A stretch of 63,747 nt of DNA, counting the filler, from Bipalium vagum (taxonomy: Eukaryota), in the NCBI GenBank assembly GCA_037834085.1. It is 3 parts of 3 records of this genome, joined end to end, with 100 filler letters (N's around TTAATTAATTAA, not from the genome) between each part and the next. Parts side by side here need not be neighbours in the genome. Positions count along the whole stretch, not along the records: positions 1 to 24,507 come from JBBMKC010200385.1; 2 more parts are not named here. One strand, 5' to 3'. The notes under the pieces were generated by a model. It saw only the letters and a list, made by a program, of their open reading frames with translations. It made no database searches and was not told the DNA's origin. Position numbers and translations under genes: made by a program. Below are positions 1-24,418 of the stretch, piece by piece. Position 1 is the first letter of the stretch; the number at the start of each line of letters is the position of its first letter.

Positions 1-1275
1 TTCCATGAACATCCTAAGGCATGATGCAAACTGCGACCTGACATGAAACTACTACCTAGTCCTTTTAATATTTGGCATATGAAATATATTCCTTAAAATC
101 CGGCAACCCATGTGCCAAAAGTATTGAAACCTCCCCAAATATATGTGATGACATGTTTTGCGGCGTGTATGTAATGATCAGCGCCGAATAATAAATTGTA
201 GTCCATTTTTCCTTGTTGGGCATTATAAATTTTCGTGATCATTTCTATTATGCCTCTCTCTTGTGCCTGAGGAAAGAGTATTACTTTCCTGGCTTGATCA
301 ATGTCTTCTGGGGAGTATATTCCTCCTTCGTTTATAGAGGGTAATGGTTTGAATTCAACCATGTTCTGCATTTCTATGGCTTCTATCGTTTGTACCTTTT
401 CTCGGGGTGGTTTTCTTTCTGGTAAAGATATCCATTGTTCTCCAATTTTATATAAAGGAGATATAATGGGACCACACATAGCTAATTTAGGCTGTACGTG
501 TACTTCCAATATTATTCGAGTTAAAGGGGAAACAAATCGTAGTTTCTTTTGATAAATAATGAGTAAGTCGCTGGTGCATTCGTTGAATTTTGCTAGAGGA
601 ACGTTTACTTTTTCACATTGGTATGTATACAAAGCTTCACCCATTTTCGACCAAAAACACCATCTTGTACTAATAAGGGTGATGTCAATTCAGGATTATT
701 AATAGCTAACAGTAAACGATTTTTCAATATTTCTCTTCCTAATTTACAATCATTTAAAATGGTTTCTTGATATACATCCTTCAATTGTGCCTGTAAGTCG
801 TGATATAGATAATCTATTTTATTATTTAAATAGATATTTAACTTAATGTCGGAGCTATCCTCTGGCATGGCTTTTGCTACTCTGTCCTTAGTAACGTATA
901 TGCCTTTATAATTCGTTTCGAATACTGCGACACCGCATTTTACCACTTGTTTCTTAATAATCAATCGGATTAGTTCTTTTTTATCCGTTGTTACTAAAAC
1001 AGTAGGTGTTTTTGCCTCATCTATGGCAGAACTTCTTCTAGGAGCCGTTCGATAATTGTCTGGAATTTTTGTATATTCGTGTTGAATGGGGTTTAGTCGT
1101 ACACCTGTTACTTCTTGAAAGTTTGTCAATTTCAGACTTCTCAGGTTACAATGATCTTTATTATTATTCTATAATAAAGTCGCTTCCTGTGTAACACAAT
1201 ATCCCTTTTTCAAATTGCAGCTGGGTTTTGATAATAATTCACCGGTAATTACATCAAATACACCTTCATACGTAA
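1..1275 (-). pseudogene. Endogenous viral element: chuvirus-like (class III fusogen-type) glycoprotein, disrupted; runs off the window start
   Basis: ORFs 605-1129 and 93-644 join by a frameshift into ...NDCKLGREILKNRLLLA...GVFG/MGEALYTYQCEKVNV...CTSDL...FVSPLTRII...CGPIISPLYKIGEQWISLPE...GGIYS...GGFNTFGTWVAG. The in-frame upstream part reads CNLKKGYCVTQEATLL*. A hydrophobic TM-like stretch follows at 1-95. The Cys spacing matches Chuviridae-like glycoproteins as I recall them. No introns. Confidence 0.75.
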
Positions 1276-14902: not shown

Positions 14903-17900
14903 TTACCAATTCCGAGAGATCGCAGAATCAATTCCGTGGACCTCGTTTTTGAATATGATTTTAGACATCACTCTGTATTTGGTATTGTTGACATTTACCG
15001 ATATCCTTTCAGCCACTGTTTCACCCAAAAGGGTGATGAGTTTGTTCCGCAACCTGTCCATGGATCTTTGAACAATAATTATCTGGAAACATAAAAGCAA
15101 AAAACAATTATGGACAACATTATTCTTCAGATATCGATTGAACAATTACCGCGTTGGGGCTTAGCCTATCTTTCGACATCATCTTGTATCGACCACAAAC
15201 CGTTAACAGGTGATAAGCTGTTACCAAGCAAGAAGCGATTCTCCAAATGGCGAAATCTTCATTGGGTGTGTTCTGGAAAGTTATTGACAAAATAACACAA
15301 AACTCGGTTGTTTTGAATGTGGAAAAATCGCTTACAAATCCCGATTCCGAGAGACCCATAATGAGCTCCTTTTGCAAAAACGTCAACAAATGCTTGATGG
15401 AGTCGAAATTCTTATCGATCTCCAAATGTTTTAAAGACCTTGGATGAACCGACATTCGACAGAAATTCAGCTTCCACAGATGATTGTTATCGGCCACGTG
15501 GTTTAGTTTGTAAATATCGTCACTGATTTCTGGGATGATCTTTTGCAAACTGACTCCTCCGACAAACAAACGCAACAAATCCGCCGACCCCTTTGTTCTG
15601 AATTAATTTATTCTTTTCGATTTATTATTGCTTCCTTACCAAAAAAGAGTCCAGAGCTCGAATTTTATTTCTCAAACTCAGAAAGAATTCTACATTTTTA
15701 TTTGACTCCTGTGCGATATCGATGCAATCACTCACCACTTCAAGAGCTATTTCAGAAGCATGGATCTGTTTAAGAATGATAAAATTAAAGAGTCAGGTTA
15801 ATGAAAAGAATAATAATATTAATAATCTTTTAAAATGATCTAAAATCAATACGAAACAATAAACATGAATATCCAATGAAAGATCGAATCAATGACAATG
15901 AAATTTTTACTTTTAAAACCGCATTTTGAATGGCAAAATTTTCAGTCGACAATTGAGAGTTCATAATATTTGTTGTAAAATAAATACTGGTATCCAGCTC
16001 GAATATTTTGGACGCCCAATCGACAATTTTGTCGTTTACATAAGTCGAAGAACTCAATTGAGACTGTAATGAGATTTCGTGTACCGCCTCTTTGGCAATA
16101 CCCAACAGAGACGATGCGACAGCGAAGCGGGCGCAGTTTTGAACTTCGTTCGCAATCTAAACAATATATAGAGAGTAGATAAATTTTGCAAAATAAATTC
16201 CAATCAAAATAAATTGATCGAAAATCGAAAGATTACTTTAAAGCCGTCTCCGATATTTCCCACCAGTTCAGCGGACAACAAGGAGTCGTTGAAAGCAACT
16301 TGAAAAACTGAAAAAGATTGAAAAATCAATATCAAAACAATCAAGAGTAACGAAAGAGAGGAAAAAAAATTAAGAACCGTTTGGAACATTGAAGATATTG
16401 TATTGGACAGAGAGATGGACATTGGGTCCCTCCAAAGGTTTGTCTATGAGAAAGGCAGACAAGTTGTTTCCCGGTTTCTGAGATCGATAAGGATTATAAA
16501 CAAAGAGCAAAGTAAAAAGAAAGCAGCCAAAGAGAAAGAATCAACCTTGCTCTTGACCTTGACAAACAAAACACAGAAATCCATATTCTTGGCATTGTAA
16601 ATCCAATTTTTGGTCGATGTTACCTTTAAGCGTTTTGTTTCGTGACAATATTCTGCGACTCCTTCCATCATTTGAATATGACTTCCACTAAATGTGGATG
16701 AGAAAGAATCAATGGATTTCTTGATGACAGAAGCAATAACATAAAAAGCAAACCAAACCTAGAACTCTCATTTAAACAAAATCCCCCAACCGAATGACCT
16801 TGGACAATTTTCGGCAAATATTTTCTCTTCTGCGCCTCAGTTCCGTATTTTGAAATGACCTTAAAATTAAAAATCTCTGTAAAAAAACAAGTTGTTTTGA
16901 ATCTAAGTTATTTTTCTGAGAAATTCCTTCATTAGACCATTAGACGATCTTCGTTATTTAGTGATTCGTCTTGACATTTATAGTCTTCCTTAGTTCTTGA
17001 TCGATAAATATTTTTCTTTCTTTTTGACACTAAAACGCGTGAAATTTGATTTAACTAACCCATTTATAAGTTTTTTTATTGATATATAAGGTTGAGAGAA
17101 AAATATTGTCGCTTTTTTTTATTTTCCATTTGAAGCAAAAATATGTTAAGATTTCGATTAATATTTTACTAATTATTGAATTATTATATGATAGATAAAC
17201 ATATTGAAATAAACCTTTATTTTATTCTTTTAGATGTTTGAATAATACAAAACTTGACATAAGAAACAATGACAACAGTTAATATCATTAATTATTTTTG
17301 GAAATACATATAAAAATATATATATATTATATTATAATATTATATAAATACAAAATTTTATTTATTTTAATGAAATCTTGAAATATGTTTTAAACGTTTT
17401 CATTTAAGTCTTCTTCAGTCACTTAATATAATTGTCAATTATTTCGGAGAAATTCAAACAACTCATTCAAATACAAGAAAAAATAATAATAAATAATAAT
17501 AATTTAGAGTTAACAATCAGTTTTAATTTGTCGAAATCTTAGAAATTTAAGACGAACATAATAGTTATTTTATTTTTTGAATTTATATAAAATTTGCATG
17601 TCACATTCAGTTTTTATATCTGGCAGAATTTTAAAAAATGTTTCATTCGAATTGTATTTATCTTCGAGAGGATAAGTATTGAATTCGGTTTTATTATATC
17701 TTCATTGTATCTATCTGTAAATCCTGTAACTTCTGAAACTTCTTTTTCTTTAATTATATACATATTAATATAAATCTGTGAAGTCTCATTATCTTTATGA
17801 ATTCCAAACAAGCATTTTTAAACTGTGGATACTCTCCATTTGAAACTTTTGATTTAGCTTTACTTAACTTCAAATCTGTCATTTTAAATATTTGCATTTT

Positions 17901-20900
17901 TCTTCAAATTACAAACACTAGTTTCACTTTTACCATATTCCGCAGCAATATCTTTTTTGTTTTTTCAGTTTATCATAGAGTAATTTTAGAATTATTGTCT
18001 TTTAAAAAAGCTAATTTTTTGTTTTCGCGATGATTCCAATTTTTTAGCATAGTTTAAAAGTACAGTTTCTTTTAATTTTTTGCAATATTTAAACAATATG
18101 TTTGGTTATTTGAAAATTCAGAAATATTGCTCAAAGAACTCAATTTTATTCAAATAAATGAGTTAATTGTAATTTACTAAAAGAAATTTGAGTTCAAATA
18201 TCTAAGTGTAGTTCTAGCCTTCTAGCTAAGACCCTCTGTAGGACCTGTTCTTCCCAGTTAACCAAACAATGAACGCTGAACACAATGAGATGTCTCTCGA
18301 GCTCAACCGAACACGATCTGATGGAGCTCCCTTCAGTTATTATGTAATCAAGCTAGTTCTCCAGTGCTGGCTGGTCACTAGCGAAGTCTCGGAATCCGGA
18401 TCCCCGATAATTAAGCTATCGCGGCTTAGGCTAAGTTTCTTTAATTTTGATATTACCATAATCTTACCTTTTTTGTTACTAGAATCACACTGATGTCTTT
18501 GGAACCAGAATGCTTCACTGCTTCGACTTATGCCTCTTTTTGGAGTCATAAAAGAGCAGGGAAACAACACCCAAGCATGGTGGATGAGTGTACCATCCCT
18601 CCGGAGCGGCGAAACAATTTCATACTCTCTAATAGAGTCCCTGAAATCTGTTTTATTCCCTCAAAACAAGTCGGAACTCTGCGCAAATTTTTTCCGGATG
18701 AGCCAGAGTTCTACCTCGGTCGGATCGCTTTCCATCACAGCTTTGTATACTTGTGTAAGAACTGTTCCACTCAGTGGGTACACGAATGAGAAACGTAACG
18801 AAAGAGATCCAAATATTGATTTGGTCAGTCGATTTCCGAGTAACCCCTTCCCTTCCCGGGATCTCGGATCCAAATGGGTCAATTAAAGGTATATATTGAG
18901 ATGTCATTCTGCTCTAACTTTTTCCGTAATAGTCAGAGGGAAAGTGGAATGATGATCGAGAGTATTCTGGACCCACTATGGTGATGAGACGATGGAGTTG
19001 GGAACCCGGAAGCGGAGTTTTCACACTACCCGTTGCCGATAACACCGTCAGCCCCTATCTCTCTGTTTGGGTGTGCAGAGATAAAAGCACCCACTCCACA
19101 GTTCGCCATGGGGTGTTTCCTGTTACTCCTCCGCCCCATCAAGTGGATATAAATGCCCCATTAAATTGGAGGAAACGCTCCAATGAGGACCGTTCGTGCT
19201 GCCCCGTGACCGACGGGTATGTAAAAACGGCCGCTAGTACGTCAATTAATAATTTTTATTGCTATCCACGTGATCCCGGTACTAATGCCACCATTTTACT
19301 AAAAAATCCTATGTCATATTTAAAGTCTAAAAACCAAATCCTTAATATTCCACCGGGACCCGACACTTTAAACTACTCGATTTCAAACGTTTACTCTAAT
19401 ATTAATCATTTCAATCCGTTAAAACTAAGTACTTGCTTATTAAACATGATGTATCTAAAGAAAAATAAATTAAATGCAAATCACTCTAACATTGTCCCTT
19501 TGAATGTTAACCTGACAAAAAGTTTGGTAAATTATCATATTAAATTAATTTCTAATATCACGTCAATATCAATCTCCTTAAACAAAACCAATTTAACCAC
19601 GAATCGTTATGAAAAGTACAAAATAAACTTTGCTCAACTCGTTAATAATAAATCAAATACTTTGAAATTTATTCCTTTATATAAAATGGCACACTGGAAA
19701 CACATAATTTTGCCAATTCTTTGGCACCCAAACCTCTGGATTCTTTACCTAGACGACAAATCTAGAAAAAAATCGTTTCTCCTCGACCCAGCCTCACAAT
19801 CACTCAACTCTGATCAACCTTACAAACATCACAAATAAACTATGCTGCACCATGGACAATGAACTCATCGTACCAGACTCAATACCAAATCTCCCCACCC
19901 AATGAATCGACATGAACTGCGGTTTTTTAATCCTGCAATATTCTGTAGACTATATCCTTAACAAACAAACCTCCAGAGCTCCATTAATTGAAAACATCAA
20001 GGAAGAGCTTACAAACATCATCCAACGAATACTTGAATCCCGAAAAACACTCCCAGATCTTTCAAAAACGAAAAACACCCACCACATACTCAAAGAAGCT
20101 CTCATCCAACTCAAAAATGAAAACCACGACATCACCATGATTCTAGAATATGCACAGAGCCACAGCTCAACTTTTCCCATCGAAATTCACCCCAATTGCA
20201 AAGAAAACCCCTACTCACAGCCATATTGCCCAATCAACCACCTCATCATTCACTCTACGAGCCAGATATGAAGCAAATCCCAAAGATACCTATCTATCAC
20301 TACTCCCATCCAGAAAACCATCATCATTCCCAACTATCGAAGAAATTATCCAACACAACTCTCACCAAACCCCACCTCCAATTAACAGAAATCTCCACCC
20401 AACATTACCAATTTCCAACTATGAAGACCTCAAACCAATCACCAAAGATGAAATCAATCACACCATCAAAATCACAAAAAAATCAACTGCGGGTATGGAC
20501 AAAATTACTTATAAAGACTGGAAGAAAATCGACCCCCAATTCGAATTCCTCGAAGCATTTTTCAAGAACGTATTAATTTTCCAAAACATCCCCCAACAAT
20601 GGAAGAAATTCAAAACCACTCTCATCCTAAAACCGGGCAAAGAAGAACAAAGCCATCAAATATCCTCATGGGGACCCATCGCTATCCTCGACACCTCAAC
20701 TCTTCTCACTCATCCTGAACAATAGATTACTGTCATGGTTAAAGCAAAGTAACCTTCTAAACAGAAACCAAAAAGCCATTTTCTCCAACATCGAATGCGG
20801 CGAACATAATGGATACATCAATGGAATCCTCGAAATGTGCACATTAAAAAAACAGAAAGTACACATCTGTTTCCTCGATCTCGCAGAAGCTTTCCCCAGC

Positions 20901-23080
20901 CTACCTCACGAACTACTCTGGCTAACCCTTCAGAAATCAGGTCTCAATGAAATTAACATCAATCTCATACAAAAACTGTACCAAAACACCTCGACAGCTT
21001 TCATTTGTCACTATCTATCCACCAGCTATATTCCAATCAATAAAGGAGTCAAACAGGGCTGTCCCCTCTCGATGATCCTGTCATGCCTCTCCATCAACTA
21101 TCTCATCACTCAAATGGACCAATAAGAACCTAAATTCACCATTATTAACTCCCAAATATCTGCACTAGCGTACGCAGACGATATTGCCCTCATAACCCAA
21201 ACAAAAGCTGACCTACAATCCATGATAAATAAACTCACTCTCCTCTCCGATGAAATCCATTTAAAATTCAGACCGTCAAAATGCGGTTATTTCATGAACT
21301 CAACAGAAGAACCACCAACCATCTACGACCAGTCAACAGTGAAAACATTAACAAATACCTTGGAGTAACACATGGATCCAAAATGAACAACGGCAATGAA
21401 TCACTTCTCGAGAGAAACCTTATTGACTTCGATTACATCTGCAAGCAAACCTTCACCCAGCCCAAATGATCCACGCATACAAAACATTTCTTCACCCAGA
21501 TTGCCCTTCCATCTAGCCAACAGAGCCGTGGACACACAACTTCTATCCTCAAAAAAGAAAGAATAACCCATAATATCCGTATCGCACCCCAGAGAATACG
21601 ACAACGAACTCAGAGAAAAACTAGGAAAAATATCAGACACAAATCTTCTACGATGAACAAACAAAGCCTATTTATACTCCCCAACAGCCCTTGATGACTA
21701 CCACATCAGCAGTATTATCCAAGCACTCCGATTCCTGACCAGCAATGACAAGAAATTTCAAAAATTCTCATCACAATTCCTCCTCCACATCACCAAAACC
21801 CCCCAGAATGAAAACTCCGACATGGAAATCGCACTAAATTGGCTATCGGACCGCCAAAACCTTCCCATCCAAGCTCACGGATCATGGTGGAACAAAGTCA
21901 GAAAATCCTGCAAAACACTGAGAATCCAGAATATCGACTGCTCATTTCAAATCATAGAAAACTAAATCAATTTACGAGTCACAACCGAAGGCATAACTGA
22001 GCCCCACATACATTTTTAACAGGGATAACATCAAATTTGTGTACCGCAGAAAAGAGTAGAGATTAATTTAATCTTAATTTTAAGCAGATGTGCCTAGTCC
22101 CGCATAACTATGCTTTTAATCTTTTGGTTTAGCAGAAATTATCCGGGAACGATGCCACGGACGCAGAGGATGAGAAAACAGTTTGAAAAATGCCAACAAT
22201 CCAACGAGAATTCAAAAACAAATCACTATCTTATGATAGAAATGTGTTATAAATCTAATAAATTTTGGCAAATCAAAAATTAACTTAATTGTAATAAATT
22301 ATTAATAATAATTTAATAACAATCAATTAATTTAAAATATTGATATAATATTTTCACTCTATATTATCTATTGTTTGTTATCAAAAAAACGGGAAAGATA
22401 AGCAAAATAATACTTCAACAATTAGATAGTGTCAGTGAACTAAATGATTTAGGAATTTATGTTAATTTATTAATAATTATCACGCATATTGTTTTGATTT
22501 AAGTATAATCTAATTTATCAAACACGTAAGATTGAATAATTACATTGTGAACAATAAATAAATTTATTAACCTCTGCACAAAGGAGCTGATTTATAATGA
22601 TATCATAGGATAACATAGTAGCAGACGGTAACTTTTCCATCAAATAAGCACAACTGGAATAGTTTTTACCTAAACCATTGTATTCTTTAGATATAAAAAT
22701 TCCAGAATAATTAATTTGCTGTTTCTTTATCAATTCATCAAAATTTTGATTATCTTTAATATTAGCAGAATCTGAAATTGATTTAATAAGTATATCATTA
22801 TTCTTCACAAGTACAATACCTAAAAAATTTATTATTTCTTTATAAATATTTTTATAGTCTTGAATAGGTACGAATTTGTAATTTTCCATATTTGAATATA
22901 CCTAAGAATATGTAAATTATTGATTACAATTTAGTATAATACTTGATTTATATTCGATAATAAAAGTGAACTAAGAAAATTTAAGTCTGAGTCTTTTGCC
23001 AATTTTGAATAATTACATTTTTGTTTTATAAAATTAGATAAAAAACAACGTGAAATTTTACTGTAAAATATAATATTCAT
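14903..23080 (-). CDS. acad9: ACAD9/VLCAD-like mitochondrial acyl-CoA dehydrogenase-fold protein (complex I assembly factor type); multi-exon, with a ~5.7-kb intron 2 (22571-16860)
   Basis: Exon 1 (23080-22943) has a presequence-like N-terminus. Exon 2 (22901-22572; ISKEYNGLG) splices in phase to [36 protein letters not shown]. Later motifs are TKNWIYNA, LSAFLID, LVGNIGDGFKIANEVQNCARF, DLLRLFVG and the VLCAD/ACAD9 C-terminal extension ending AISRNW*. Confidence 0.88.
17600..18060 (-). mobile_element. Tigger/pogo N-terminal (CENP-B-type HTH) remnant in ACAD9 intron 2
   Basis: Degenerate KKDIAAEYGKSETSVCNLKKN...YPQLKNACLEFIK with stops. Confidence 0.55.
18204..22020 (+). mobile_element. Utopia/NeSL-clade site-specific non-LTR retrotransposon (Ulp1-like protease + RT); decayed, with the 3' RLE endonuclease missing
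   Basis: RT motifs STAGMDKITY, WKKFKTTLILKPG, ISSWGPIAIL, GEHN, FLDLAEAFPSLPH, KGVKQGCPLS, LAYADDIAL and KYLGV. An upstream C48/Ulp1-like pattern reads IILPILW..NLWIL..LLDP...MNCGFLILQY. U2-like 5' end; multiple frameshifts and stops. Confidence 0.85.
18212..18259 (+). ncRNA. Diverged U2 snRNA 5' fragment at the 5' end of the retrotransposon
   Basis: 18217-18259 aligns without gaps at 33/43 nt to the conserved U2 segment GCCTTTTGGCTAAGATCAAGTGTAGTATCTGTTCTTATCAGTT (recalled sequence). It is preceded by aagtgtagt (18204-18212), also a U2 word. No Sm site or 3' half is visible. Confidence 0.65.
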
Positions 23081-23394: not shown

Positions 23395-24418
23395 AATAGG
23401 TTGTTCAGTATGAAATTGCGGATTTTTTATACTAATTTTCAAATTAAAGTTAATCACAAACATTAACAATAAATTTTTTGTTTATATATACCAAATTAAA
23501 GAGTAACTTTCAAACTGTAATATAAATATAAAAGTAAGCATATTAATTTAAAGTAAAAGTTTTTTTATCGTTCTTTACCAGGCTTGGTTGATCAACAAAT
23601 TCGAATATACATATTATACGAGTTCAAACTTGACCACAATGCATCAGAAGCAACTCGAAACATTATTGCTGCATGGGGTGAAGGTAGTATAAGCGAAAGA
23701 ACAACACAGATATGGTTCAAAAAATTTCGAGACGGGGACCTAAGTCTCCACAATCAAGACCGCGGAAGACCCCCTCTTAAATAAAGCCCAATTGAAGTCA
23801 GCTGTCGAAGAAAATACTCGAACAAATGTGAGAGAACTTGCTCAAGTTCTCAATGTATCCAAATCAACAATTTCCACCCATCTAAAAGAGATTGTTAAGG
23901 TTATGACGCTTGATTCATGGATTCCCCATGATTTAACAGAAAATCCACAAAAATATCGATTGCAAATCTGTTCGTCATTAATAAATTGGAACCAAATTGA
24001 TCCCTTTTTGTCTCGTATTATTATGAAAAGTGGATTGTGTAAAACAATCGTAGACGATCAGCGCAATGGTAATATGCTGATGAGAAGCCGAAAACCATGT
24101 CTAGACCAAGCCTTCACCCCAAGAAGACCATGATAACTGCGTGGTGGTCTGAGGATGGCTTAATACATTACAATTTCTTGAAATCAGGTGAAACTATTAC
24201 CACACAGTCATACTTTCAAGAAATTGATGCTATGCACACAAAGCTGATTCAAAAACAACCAGGTCCTGTAAACCGAAAGGGGCCGATCTTGCTTCAGGAT
24301 AATGCAAGACCACATGTTTCTAAAGTGTTTCTAATTTTCCAGGACCAAGATGCCATCGAAAAAGATATCGCTCAATTTCTCGATTCAAGGAGTTCGGAGT
24401 TTTACCAAAAAGGTAATT
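23395..24418 (+). mobile_element. Decayed mariner element, 3' end cut by a piggyBac-like end (ttaa|ccct at ~24417)
   Basis: IRIYILYEFKLDHNASEATRNI, WIPHDL, LHPKKTMITAWW and LLQDNARPHV; 5' TIR ataggttgttcagtatgaaattgcgg. Confidence 0.9.

What the first reader, a model, noticed from the sequence alone, without database searches (positions are those of the whole stretch)
18200..18262. Retrotransposon begins with its own variant U2 snRNA 5' segment, behind a U2-like junction word
Seen: at the sharp AT-to-GC boundary is aagtgtagt, followed by a 43-nt ungapped U2 match (33/43) that can still form a stem-loop-I-like hairpin (tagc/gcta). The branch-point-recognition region is changed from AAGTGTAGTA to CTCTGTAGGA. 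Known: Utopia elements target U2 snRNA genes close to this sequence. Inference: the element carries a U2-derived leader. It could guide 5' joining, be co-transcribed from a U2 promoter, or have its target bases altered to avoid self-cleavage. Here it sits in a protein-gene intron, not in a full U2 gene.
Basis: partly seen in the sequence, partly recalled or inferred. Interest (0 to 1): 0.75.

Follow-up and report, generated by a model that had tools for sequence, protein, structure and literature searches.

The report
Retrotransposon carrying a U2-derived head
A decayed jumping gene of the kind that normally lands inside U2 snRNA genes sits here at an ordinary site and still carries, as its own first 50 bases, a copy of the front end of a U2 gene, which shows how such elements can take their landing site with them.

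Summary
The U2-like stretch at 18213-18262 is real, but this window alone does not prove it. Rfam's U2 model gives no hit, and whole-window shuffles reach the same alignment scores. The proof comes from other copies. Eleven further 5' ends of the same repeat family, each at a different flank, carry the same head. In three of them it matches nt 1-60 of a variant U2 gene family of this genome at 44/51 to 51/60. The element is a non-LTR retrotransposon with Ulp1 protease, RT, CCHC and a restriction-like endonuclease. Two protein relatives on metagenome contigs are followed by U2 from about nt 38/39, the defining Utopia junction. The window copy runs from about 18213 to 22278 and has lost 1,038 nt, including the endonuclease. 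Only 2 of 27 family 3' ends abut U2-like sequence, so target specificity is weak. A second U2-like head lies inside the element at 18723-18776, and in another copy a different Utopia-type element has inserted exactly at its target position. Most likely the head was picked up by transcription from the U2 start site of a U2-resident master copy. Template switching onto U2 RNA is the main rival. This is a new structural variant of a known kind.

The parts
18200..18212 (+). Junction zone holding the U2-like word AAGTGTAGT (18204-18212). It is either flank, meaning a U2-like half target ending at the Utopia cleavage position, or the first bases of the head. The exact 5' boundary lies somewhere in 18200-18213.
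   Evidence: One search gives the sequence; one occurrence against 0.12 expected; the 5' half of the window head has no sibling in the genome, so copies cannot fix the boundary. By my own reading, the 15 bases 18198-18212 match 13 of 15 with canonical U2 at about nt 24-38.
18213..18262 (+). Outer U2-derived head (head 1), equivalent to U2 nt 6 to about 57. It covers stem-loop I, the altered branch-point word and the Utopia target word.
   Evidence: 39/51 to variant U2 and 39/53 to canonical U2; alignment with 10 other copies; fold.
18263..18722 (+). Spacer module S between the two heads. A frame opens at the ATG at 18269. An almost invariant block lies at about 18365-18410.
   Evidence: the frame stays open to the end of the aligned stretch in 5 of 7 copies (103-155 codons); minimum substitutions by codon position are 58/48/52, so there is no third-position excess; 26 predicted pairs, 1 compensatory. 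L012/L029 share S only up to 18697.
18723..18776 (+). Inner U2-derived head (head 2), equivalent to variant U2 nt 1-54.
   Evidence: 32/43 ungapped against a shuffle maximum of 29; 42/55; conserved in L026, L027, L028 and L040. By my reading, L028 and L040 share 23 consecutive bases with variant U2 (nt 32-54); in L061 another element's 3' end sits exactly in front of the CTGTTCTT word of this head.
19671..19838 (+). Remnant of the Ulp1-like cysteine protease domain, at the C-terminal part of ORF 18978-19838.
   Evidence: One search gives the translation; the homologous ORF of copy L037 hits PF02902 at 2.3e-07; the best relatives carry PF00078 plus PF02902.
20150..21469 (+). Reverse transcriptase, broken over several frames.
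   Evidence: PF00078 at 5.3e-10 for 20835-21125; the 702-codon open frame of copy L064 hits PF00078 at 7.8e-28.
22036..22038 (+). Internal deletion point. 1,038 nt present in copy L038 are missing here, including the CCHC finger and the restriction-like endonuclease.
   Evidence: The L038 ORF 1214-2014 and the L064 frame show the CCHC and the PD..D.K-like motifs.
22038..22278 (+). Last 241 nt of the element (3' UTR), with no poly-A tail. The flank begins at about 22279 and is not U2.
   Evidence: 87% identity to the 3' ends of L038 and L060..

Best explanation
Window 18213-22278 (+) is an old copy of a Utopia-lineage non-LTR retrotransposon. The domain order is Ulp1 protease, RT, CCHC, restriction-like endonuclease, and a full-length copy is about 5.1 kb. 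This copy has an internal deletion and lies at a site that is not a U2 gene. Its first 50 nt or so are not flank. They are a head that the family carries with it, derived from nt 1 to about 57 of a U2 gene of the variant type that serves as the landing site for Utopia-type elements in this genome.

The most likely origin is inferred, not shown. A master copy sat inside a U2-type gene, behind about nt 57. This requires a top-strand cut roughly 20 nt downstream of the bottom-strand nick, as published for reptile Utopia. The master was transcribed from the U2 start site. The whole read-through RNA, U2 head included, was then reverse-transcribed at new sites.

The same thing happened at least twice, because a second U2 head lies about 510 nt inside the element (18723-18776). 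The simplest history is this: an element that already carried a head landed in the 5' region of another head-bearing element, and the composite was then transcribed from the outer U2 start.

The head contains the Utopia target word. At true U2 targets its cDNA could pair with the upstream half of the target to complete the 5' junction. At other sites it creates a new target. The window copy landed at a U2-like half site, its 5' flank ending in AAGTGTAGT, which fits weakened but not lost target preference.
For: SHOWN.
1. The head is borne by the element. All 12 5' ends (window; L012-L019, L023 and L024; L108) share the target-word part of the head, including a family-specific C in TTCCCAG where U2 has T or A. 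Their upstream flanks are unrelated. Four copies of one subfamily (L013, L016, L017, L108) share an identical-type head at four different flanks.
2. The head is U2-derived and starts at U2 nt 1. Identity to variant U2 L003 is 51/60 over nt 1-60 for L014, 51/60 over nt 2-60 for L024, 44/51 over nt 10-60 for L023, and 21/21 over nt 2-22 for L012.
3. The variant U2 looks like a real gene family. L003 is full length at 120.5 bits in Rfam. L003 and L010 share the proximal upstream motif.
4. The variant U2 is a Utopia-type target. L010 has nt 1-38, then a 412-nt insert, then nt 39 onward, in one contig. Of 20 further sites with the variant target word, 17 have an A-rich retroelement 3' end directly in front of CTGTTCTT. 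L005, L006 and L007 show the same.
5. The lineage is Utopia. RT (7.8e-28) and Ulp1 protease (2.3e-07) are found, and the CCHC plus PD..D.K-like motifs. Relatives L120 and L127 are followed on the same strand by U2 from about nt 38/39 (U2 model 104.4 and 47.6 bits).
6. The window site is not U2. The 3' flank at 22279 onward is unrelated.
7. Head 2 is U2-like and still serves as a target.
8. Three independent U2 heads end at nearly the same place: nt 57 (head 1), nt 54 (head 2) and nt 60 (a ~330-nt SINE-like unit). That position is where the paper (PMC4640811, Results read in full) puts the far edge of the 20-bp duplication in reptile Utopia.

INFERRED: transcription from the U2 promoter, and a role of the head in 5' joining.
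Against: - There is no RNA evidence. The only run found is not on record as RNA and is kept as Logan contigs.
- I found no master copy with a U2 promoter, a head, the element and the rest of U2 together in one contig.
- The one complete insertion in a variant U2 gene that I saw (L010, another family, possibly 5'-truncated) has its 5' flank ending at nt 38 with no duplication. A read-through from such a site would give a 38-nt head, not a 57-nt one.
- In subfamilies A (L013 type) and B (L018 type), only nt 33-57 or so is detectably U2-like (23/25 and 19/21). By my own count, the 5' half of the subfamily A head matches variant U2 at about 10 of 31 positions, which is chance level. A full U2 nt 1-57 head is therefore shown only for the L014 group and, more weakly, for the window copy.
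- The 5' half of the window head has no sibling, so for this one copy it could in principle come from the target.
- Only 2 of 27 family 3' ends abut U2-like sequence.
Confidence: 0.6

Rival explanations
1. Template switching. At the end of reverse transcription the enzyme jumped from the 5' end of the element RNA onto a U2 (variant) snRNA molecule and copied it to its first base. The chimera became a master copy, and the same thing happened again later to give the second head.
For: The SINEU paper (PMC4494074, passages seen) describes recurrent addition of U1- or U2-derived sequence to the 5' ends of crocodilian SINEs and attributes it to template switching. This route also gives a head that starts at U2 nt 1. 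Two stacked heads fit 'recurrent addition'. The variant U2 genes L003 and L010 share an upstream motif, so they may be expressed and could supply the RNA.
Against: The three independent heads end within 7 nt of each other (nt 54, 57 and 60), instead of at the U2 3' end or at scattered positions. They end where a staggered Utopia cut is published to lie (PMC4640811). The heads are of the variant U2 type that is the landing site, not of the canonical type (L001, L002) that I would expect to be the abundant snRNA. That expectation is untested.
Confidence: 0.22
2. The U2-like stretch in the window is flank, not element. The copy landed in a pre-existing U2 pseudogene fragment at this locus, and only the conserved target-word part belongs to the element.
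For: The 5' half of the window head (18212-18243) is unique in the genome. It is intermediate between canonical and variant U2. A further U2-like word lies just upstream.
Against: The 3' flank at 22279 onward is not U2, so a U2 fragment would have to have been cut off exactly at the insertion point. Every other copy carries a head at an unrelated flank. The order upstream, about nt 24-38 followed by nt 6-57, is not collinear with a U2 gene.
Confidence: 0.08
3. Chance resemblance of an AT-poor 5' UTR to U2.
For: Shuffles of the window reach the same local alignment scores. Rfam U2 gives no match. The hairpin is no better than shuffles.
Against: Sibling copies match variant U2 at 51/60 from its first base, and one matches 21/21. 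Head 2 shares 23 consecutive bases with variant U2 in two copies. The protein lineage is U2-targeting.
Confidence: 0.02

Closest known systems
Utopia (U2 snRNA gene-targeting non-LTR retrotransposons, NeSL clade; Kojima & Jurka 2015, PMC4640811)
   Same: Both have RT, CCHC and a restriction-like endonuclease. Protein relatives sit in front of U2 from nt 38/39. The same junction is used many times in this genome. Families with weak specificity whose junctions keep short U2-like words are described for crocodilians. Tandem Utopia-Utopia arrangements are described for Nasonia.
   Different: Here the front end of U2 is part of the element itself and travels to non-U2 sites, and it is present twice in the element. 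The words promoter, ribozyme and template do not occur in that paper's main text. The paper says arthropod Utopia make no duplication. I did not establish the host group of this genome.
Utopia-1_TSP and NeSL-1 of nematodes (Ulp1-like protease upstream of RT)
   Same: An Ulp1-like cysteine protease domain lies N-terminal to RT (PF02902). The best database relatives carry PF00078 plus PF02902.
   Different: NeSL-1 targets spliced-leader genes. No reference sequences were at hand, so I did not test how close this family is to them.
R2 elements in 28S rRNA genes
   Same: R2 is an RLE element that has no promoter of its own and is co-transcribed with its host gene. Host-gene sequence at the RNA 5' end is thought to help form the 5' junction.
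   Different: R2 trims the co-transcript with an HDV-like ribozyme. No such ribozyme family scored in the window. R2 copies outside rDNA carrying a 28S head as a stable part of the element are not the rule.
SINEU (crocodilian SINEs with U1/U2-derived heads; PMC4494074)
   Same: SINEU elements have a U2-derived sequence at the 5' end of a retroposon, recurrent stacking of such heads, and an open question of how they are transcribed (passages). This genome also holds a ~330-nt SINE-like unit behind variant U2 nt 1-60.
   Different: SINEU elements are short, have poly-A tails, and are thought to be moved by Tx1-type (APE) LINEs. Here the head sits on the autonomous RLE element itself.
L1 5' transduction and U6-L1 chimeric retrocopies
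   Same: In both cases upstream or foreign RNA sequence is copied in front of a LINE.
   Different: Those are sporadic single events. Here the head is inherited by a whole family and contains the family's own target word. This rests on my own knowledge.

Membership tests
Utopia | Non-LTR retrotransposon encoding RT followed by a zinc finger and a PD-(D/E)xK restriction-like endonuclease | tested here: met
   Family copies: RT PF00078 at 7.8e-28 in the 702-codon frame of L064, and the CCHC finger plus the RPD..ILDLK-type motif in L064 and L038. The endonuclease motif was read by eye; it has no Pfam hit. The window copy itself lacks this part because of a 1,038-nt deletion.
Utopia | 3' end abuts U2 snRNA gene sequence starting at nt 39 | tested here: inconclusive
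   For this family, 2 of 27 3' junctions continue with U2-like sequence (L091 and L106). The 27 are 6, 20 and the window. An exact pattern search found no family end at the U2 word; its 1 hit belongs to another family. Relatives L120 and L127 do abut U2. This fits the paper's class of weakly specific families.
Utopia | RT groups with Utopia families in a phylogeny of the NeSL clade | not testable with these tools
   No named Utopia or NeSL reference proteins were available, and the best 23 hits are unnamed. Indirect support: the only two relatives with a 3' flank in hand are U2-inserted.
Utopia-1_TSP / NeSL-type architecture | Ulp1-like cysteine protease domain N-terminal to RT | tested here: met
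   PF02902 at 2.3e-07 in the L037 ORF and 1.3e-12 in relative P0001. A remnant lies in the window at about 19671-19838.
U2 snRNA gene (Rfam RF00004) | Scores with the U2 covariance model | tested here: not met
   No match at E <= 10 in the window. The genome's real U2 genes score 184 bits (L001, L002) and 120.5 bits (L003). The window holds only a diverged U2 nt 6-57.
R2-type co-transcript processing | HDV-like self-cleaving ribozyme at the 5' end | tested here: not met
   No ribozyme family at E <= 10 in 18100-18500. The invariant block in S shows no covariation: 1 of 26 pairs is compensatory. A new ribozyme type is not excluded.
SINEU | Short non-autonomous element with an snRNA-derived head and a poly-A tail | tested here: not met
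   The window element is a ~5.1-kb autonomous-type family without a poly-A tail. The separate ~330-nt unit behind variant U2 nt 1-60, which has an A-rich tail, does resemble this kind.

The most novel reading that the evidence does not exclude
The U2 head is a portable landing pad. By copying U2 nt 1 to about 60, which holds the whole Utopia target word, in front of themselves, Utopia-type elements and a SINE-like passenger seed new target sites wherever they land, and later insertions then use those sites.

Three observations bear on this. Head 2 of copy L061 is hit at the exact target position by another family. Of 17 junction sites at the variant target word, 8 lead into a head-bearing unit and 7 into a U2 gene body. 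Units also insert into each other's heads (C24953).

This would ease the puzzle stated in the Utopia paper of how several families persist on a handful of U2 genes. It would make the head an adaptive part of the element, used both to join the 5' end and to multiply targets.
Probability: 0.3. Interest if true: 0.7.

Novelty: new variant of a known kind. Interest (0 to 1): 0.5.

Why it matters
Target-specific retrotransposons that live in low-copy genes such as U2 face a shortage of sites. How they are transcribed, and how they finish their 5' junction, is largely unknown outside R2. A family that stably carries the U2 start, twice over, bears on three points. It is sequence-level evidence for expression from the host snRNA start site, or for repeated template switching. 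It offers a natural substrate for testing how the 5' junction forms. It also suggests a way in which these elements create their own new targets. The same genome holds a variant U2 gene family with an altered branch-point word that is heavily colonised, which may interest snRNA biologists. None of this changes the classification of the element: it is a Utopia-lineage element with a new 5' architecture.

Tried and rejected
1. I did not take this as refutation, because only about 50 of the model's 192 positions are present.

2. Whole-window shuffle tests did not make head 1 significant. They did turn up head 2.

3. Head hairpin stability is no better than shuffles for any of the 5 heads folded. 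I rejected it as evidence of selection.

4. I first read the sequence behind variant U2 nt 60 (L072, L079 and 8 tandem sites) as the 5' end of another Utopia LINE, and as proof of a 20-bp duplication. Searches showed it is a ~330-nt unit without RT, so I withdrew that argument. No locus with U2 nt 1-60, an element and U2 nt 41 onward in one contig was seen.

5. L076 (C215616) looked like a copy of this family in a U2 site. Only its last 26 nt match, so it is another family.

6. Coding test of module S: the frame stays open in 5 of 7 copies, but substitutions are even over codon positions (58/48/52). The question is unresolved.

7. A possible ribozyme in the invariant block of S has no support.

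8. RNA evidence: the one run found is not on record as RNA and is kept as contigs. Its contigs only confirm the junction.

9. The 'gene intron' claim was not verified.

11. I did not try to name the organism.

12. Supplementary figures S1-S4 of PMC4640811, which list individual junctions, were not seen. They may already show head-bearing copies.
Full report
THE WINDOW

The piece is AT-rich (GC 0.17-0.30 over most of it) with a GC 0.34-0.44 block from about 18200 to 22000. A Logan contig of 1426 nt from the only public run that holds this DNA covers 17700-18563 without a difference. The junction is therefore not an artefact of this assembly, though that run may be the assembly's own source.

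IS THE U2 RESEMBLANCE MORE THAN CHANCE?

Judged from the window alone, no.
- Rfam's U2 model finds nothing at E <= 10 in the whole piece or in 18100-18500.
- The best local alignment scores to this genome's canonical U2 (31) and variant U2 (37) lie within what block-wise shuffles of the window give (maxima 32 and 39).
- The stem-loop-I-like hairpin forms in the minimum-energy fold but is no more stable than shuffles (z +1.09).

The junction word is a different matter. It occurs once in the window against 0.12 expected, and it lies exactly at the edge of the element.

WHAT THE OTHER COPIES SHOW

The 5' region of the block is repeated in the genome (15 matches including itself).

Aligning 10 other 5' ends, plus one more found later (L108), shows that all 12 share the part of the head equivalent to U2 nt 33 or so to 57. 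This includes a C in TTCCCAG where U2 has T or A. The sequences upstream of the head are unrelated from copy to copy.

The genome's U2 genes were found with Rfam (17 matches, 14 over the cut-off). Besides canonical genes (L001, L002, 184 bits) there is a full-length variant, L003 (120.5 bits), on an AT-rich contig. It has a changed stem-loop I and a changed branch-point word.

The heads of one subfamily match this variant from its very first bases:
- L014: 51/60 over nt 1-60
- L024: 51/60 over nt 2-60
- L023: 44/51 over nt 10-60
- L012: 21/21 over nt 2-22

The window head matches at 39/51 (nt 6-55) and is intermediate between canonical and variant U2.

In two other subfamilies (L013 type, 4 copies; L018 type) only nt 33-57 or so is recognisably U2 (23/25 and 19/21). 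The 5' half is of similar length but, by my count, matches at chance level.

So the head is inherited with the element, it is U2-derived, and where it is complete it starts at U2 nt 1.

WHAT THE ELEMENT IS

The window copy has broken RT frames (PF00078 at 5.3e-10 for 20835-21125).

Homology to other copies runs to 22036 and resumes at 22038. Compared with L038, 1,038 nt are missing there. The last 241 nt (22038-22278) are the family's 3' end, which has no poly-A tail.

Better copies carry:
- a 702-codon open frame with RT (7.8e-28), a CCHC finger and an RPD..ILDLK-type restriction-like endonuclease motif (L064);
- upstream of RT, an Ulp1-like protease (PF02902 at 2.3e-07 in L037).

The best database relatives (31-42% identity, about 1100 aa) also carry PF00078 plus PF02902 and are unnamed.

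Of the 80 related loci kept from metagenome contigs, three cover the endonuclease end. Two of these, L120 and L127, are followed on the same strand by U2 that begins at about nt 38/39 (Rfam U2 104.4 and 47.6 bits; junctions). The third, L119, ends before any flank.

That junction is what defines Utopia. According to the paper (PMC4640811; abstract and all of Results and Discussion read), the 3' flank starts at U2 nt 39, the 5' boundaries vary, arthropod families make no duplication, reptile families make 20-bp duplications, and weakly specific families keep short U2-like words at their junctions. An Ulp1 protease is reported for Utopia-1_TSP and for NeSL.

HOW SPECIFIC IS THIS FAMILY?

Not very. 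Of 27 3' junctions, only L091 and L106 continue with U2-like sequence. The 27 are 6, 20 (chosen as the 0-1 mismatch hits, not already in hand, out of 56 pattern hits) and the window. An exact pattern search found one retroelement end abutting the U2 word, and it belongs to another family.

The family's 3' ends stop at variable points within a terminal AAAACTGTA. Its last bases repeat the start of the U2 target word.

The window copy's 3' flank is not U2. Its 5' flank ends in AAGTGTAGT, the U2 bases just upstream of the Utopia cut. This looks like insertion at a half target. However, the 5' half of the window head has no sibling in the genome, so I cannot exclude that the word belongs to a rearranged head. 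The boundary lies within 18200-18213.

THE U2-TYPE TARGET SITES IN THIS GENOME

L010 holds, in one contig, variant U2 nt 1-38, a 412-nt insert with an A-rich end, and variant U2 from nt 39 on. That is a precise insertion without duplication. L003 and L010 share the sequence just upstream of the U2 start. The upstream flanks of the other U2-type heads examined (L072, L079, L014, L024, L012) are unrelated to one another and to L003.

I inspected 20 further sites with the variant target word:
- 17 have an A-rich retroelement end directly in front of CTGTTCTT;
- 2 have intact nt 1-60;
- 1 is cut off by the contig end.

Behind the target word, the 17 go on as follows:
- 7 into the U2 body;
- 8 into a shared non-U2 sequence;
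- 2 are unclear.

That shared sequence is not a LINE 5' end, as I first assumed. It is a ~330-nt unit with an A-rich tail and no RT, with 40 other matches in the genome. The unit is preceded by variant U2 nt 1-60, and its own tail sits in front of another unit's target word (C24953). It is a SINE-like passenger with a U2 head.

A SECOND HEAD

The shuffle test turned up a better U2 match inside the element, at 18723-18776. It scores 32/43 ungapped against a shuffle maximum of 29, and 42/55 to variant U2 nt 1-54. It is conserved in L026, L027, L028 and L040, two of which share 23 consecutive bases with variant U2.

In copy L061, the 3' end of yet another element lies exactly in front of the CTGTTCTT word of this inner head. 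By eye, that element is of the same kind as the one at site L082. The carried head therefore works as a target.

Copy L012/L029 shares head 1 and the spacer only up to 18697 and then differs. This fits a composite origin of the 5' region.

The spacer keeps an open frame in 5 of 7 copies but shows no third-position excess. It contains a nearly invariant block without covariation. Its role is open.

MECHANISM

Shown: a Utopia-lineage family carries a U2 head that starts at U2 nt 1 and ends at about nt 57. A second head ends at nt 54, and an unrelated passenger's head ends at nt 60.

Inferred: the heads come from transcripts that start at the U2 start site of a gene in which the element sat behind about nt 57-60. 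That is the structure a 20-bp staggered cut would give, as published for reptile Utopia.

Against this: no RNA data exist, I saw no such master locus, and the one complete gene insertion (L010) has no duplication.

The main rival is template switching onto U2 RNA, the explanation given for the stacked U1/U2 heads of crocodilian SINEU (PMC4494074, passages). The clustering of the three head ends, and the use of the variant (landing-site) U2 type, make me prefer read-through, at about 0.6 against 0.2.

What the head does now is conjecture. It may pair with the upstream half of a U2 target to finish the 5' junction, it may supply new targets, or it may do nothing.

COMPARISON AND NOVELTY

Utopia, its junction, its weakly specific families, tandem arrangements and the Ulp1 variant are all known.

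What I did not find in print is a Utopia-type LINE that carries the U2 front end as a stable part of itself, twice, and whose carried head is reused as a target. The Utopia paper's main text does not contain the words promoter, ribozyme or template. Full-text searches gave nothing on the point. The supplements were not seen, and subscription journals are not covered.

I rate this a new variant of a known kind, of moderate interest.

Noticed in passing
L003 (G000:C245753:420-610, -), L010 (G000:C118115), and about 24 further sites listed: A variant U2 gene family with a changed stem-loop I and a changed branch-point-recognition word. It is full length at 120.5 bits in Rfam and has a shared upstream motif in L003 and L010. 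Most copies seen are interrupted at the Utopia site. Whether it is expressed or functional is unknown.
   Followed up: partly
L201-L204, L199, L200; for example G000:C202838:7390-7800 (-): A SINE-like unit made of variant U2 nt 1-60 followed by a ~330-nt body with an A-rich tail and no RT. It has 40 other matches in the genome. Units sit in each other's U2 heads. It resembles the crocodilian SINEU idea but appears to depend on Utopia-type machinery.
   Followed up: partly
L004 (G000:C227334:1552-1722, -): A canonical-type U2 that begins at about nt 38 behind an unrelated A-rich sequence. The canonical U2 genes are therefore hit at the same site, on contigs of higher GC (0.44-0.51) than the window.
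   Followed up: no
window 18365-18410 and the same block in 7 other copies: A block of about 45 nt in the spacer between the two heads is almost invariant across subfamilies that differ by about 20% elsewhere. It shows no covariation and has no Rfam match.
   Followed up: partly
window 93-1129 (-): Two adjoining ORFs match a viral fusion glycoprotein family (PF24664, 2.4e-27 and 1.1e-16), probably an endogenous viral relic. Observed only.
   Followed up: no
window 23792-24133 (+): An ORF with helix-turn-helix (HTH) matches. By eye it has the look of a mariner/Tc1-type transposase N-terminus. A similar fragment lies in L199 422-751 (-).
   Followed up: no
L035 (G000:C270631) against window 21874-22279: This copy is only 75-79% identical to the window copy, yet it seems to lack most of the same endonuclease region. 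If the deletion is shared, an endonuclease-less derivative may have been mobilised in trans.
   Followed up: no
L119 (metagenome contig) 3-761: The closest relative with DNA in hand has an open frame of at least 253 codons upstream of the protease-RT-endonuclease ORF. An upstream ORF may be usual in this lineage, which bears on whether the window's spacer is coding.
   Followed up: no
L120 3577-3607: In this relative the last 30 nt or so of the element, in front of U2 nt 38/39, themselves resemble U2 nt 15-38. This is either a decayed duplicate of the target's upstream half or chance.
   Followed up: no
window 18510-18725 and 18940-19265: The summed word depth of the Logan contigs is 15 to 100 times the single-copy level of 16.4. 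Parts of the 5' region are therefore far more abundant in the reads than the assembled copy count suggests.
   Followed up: no
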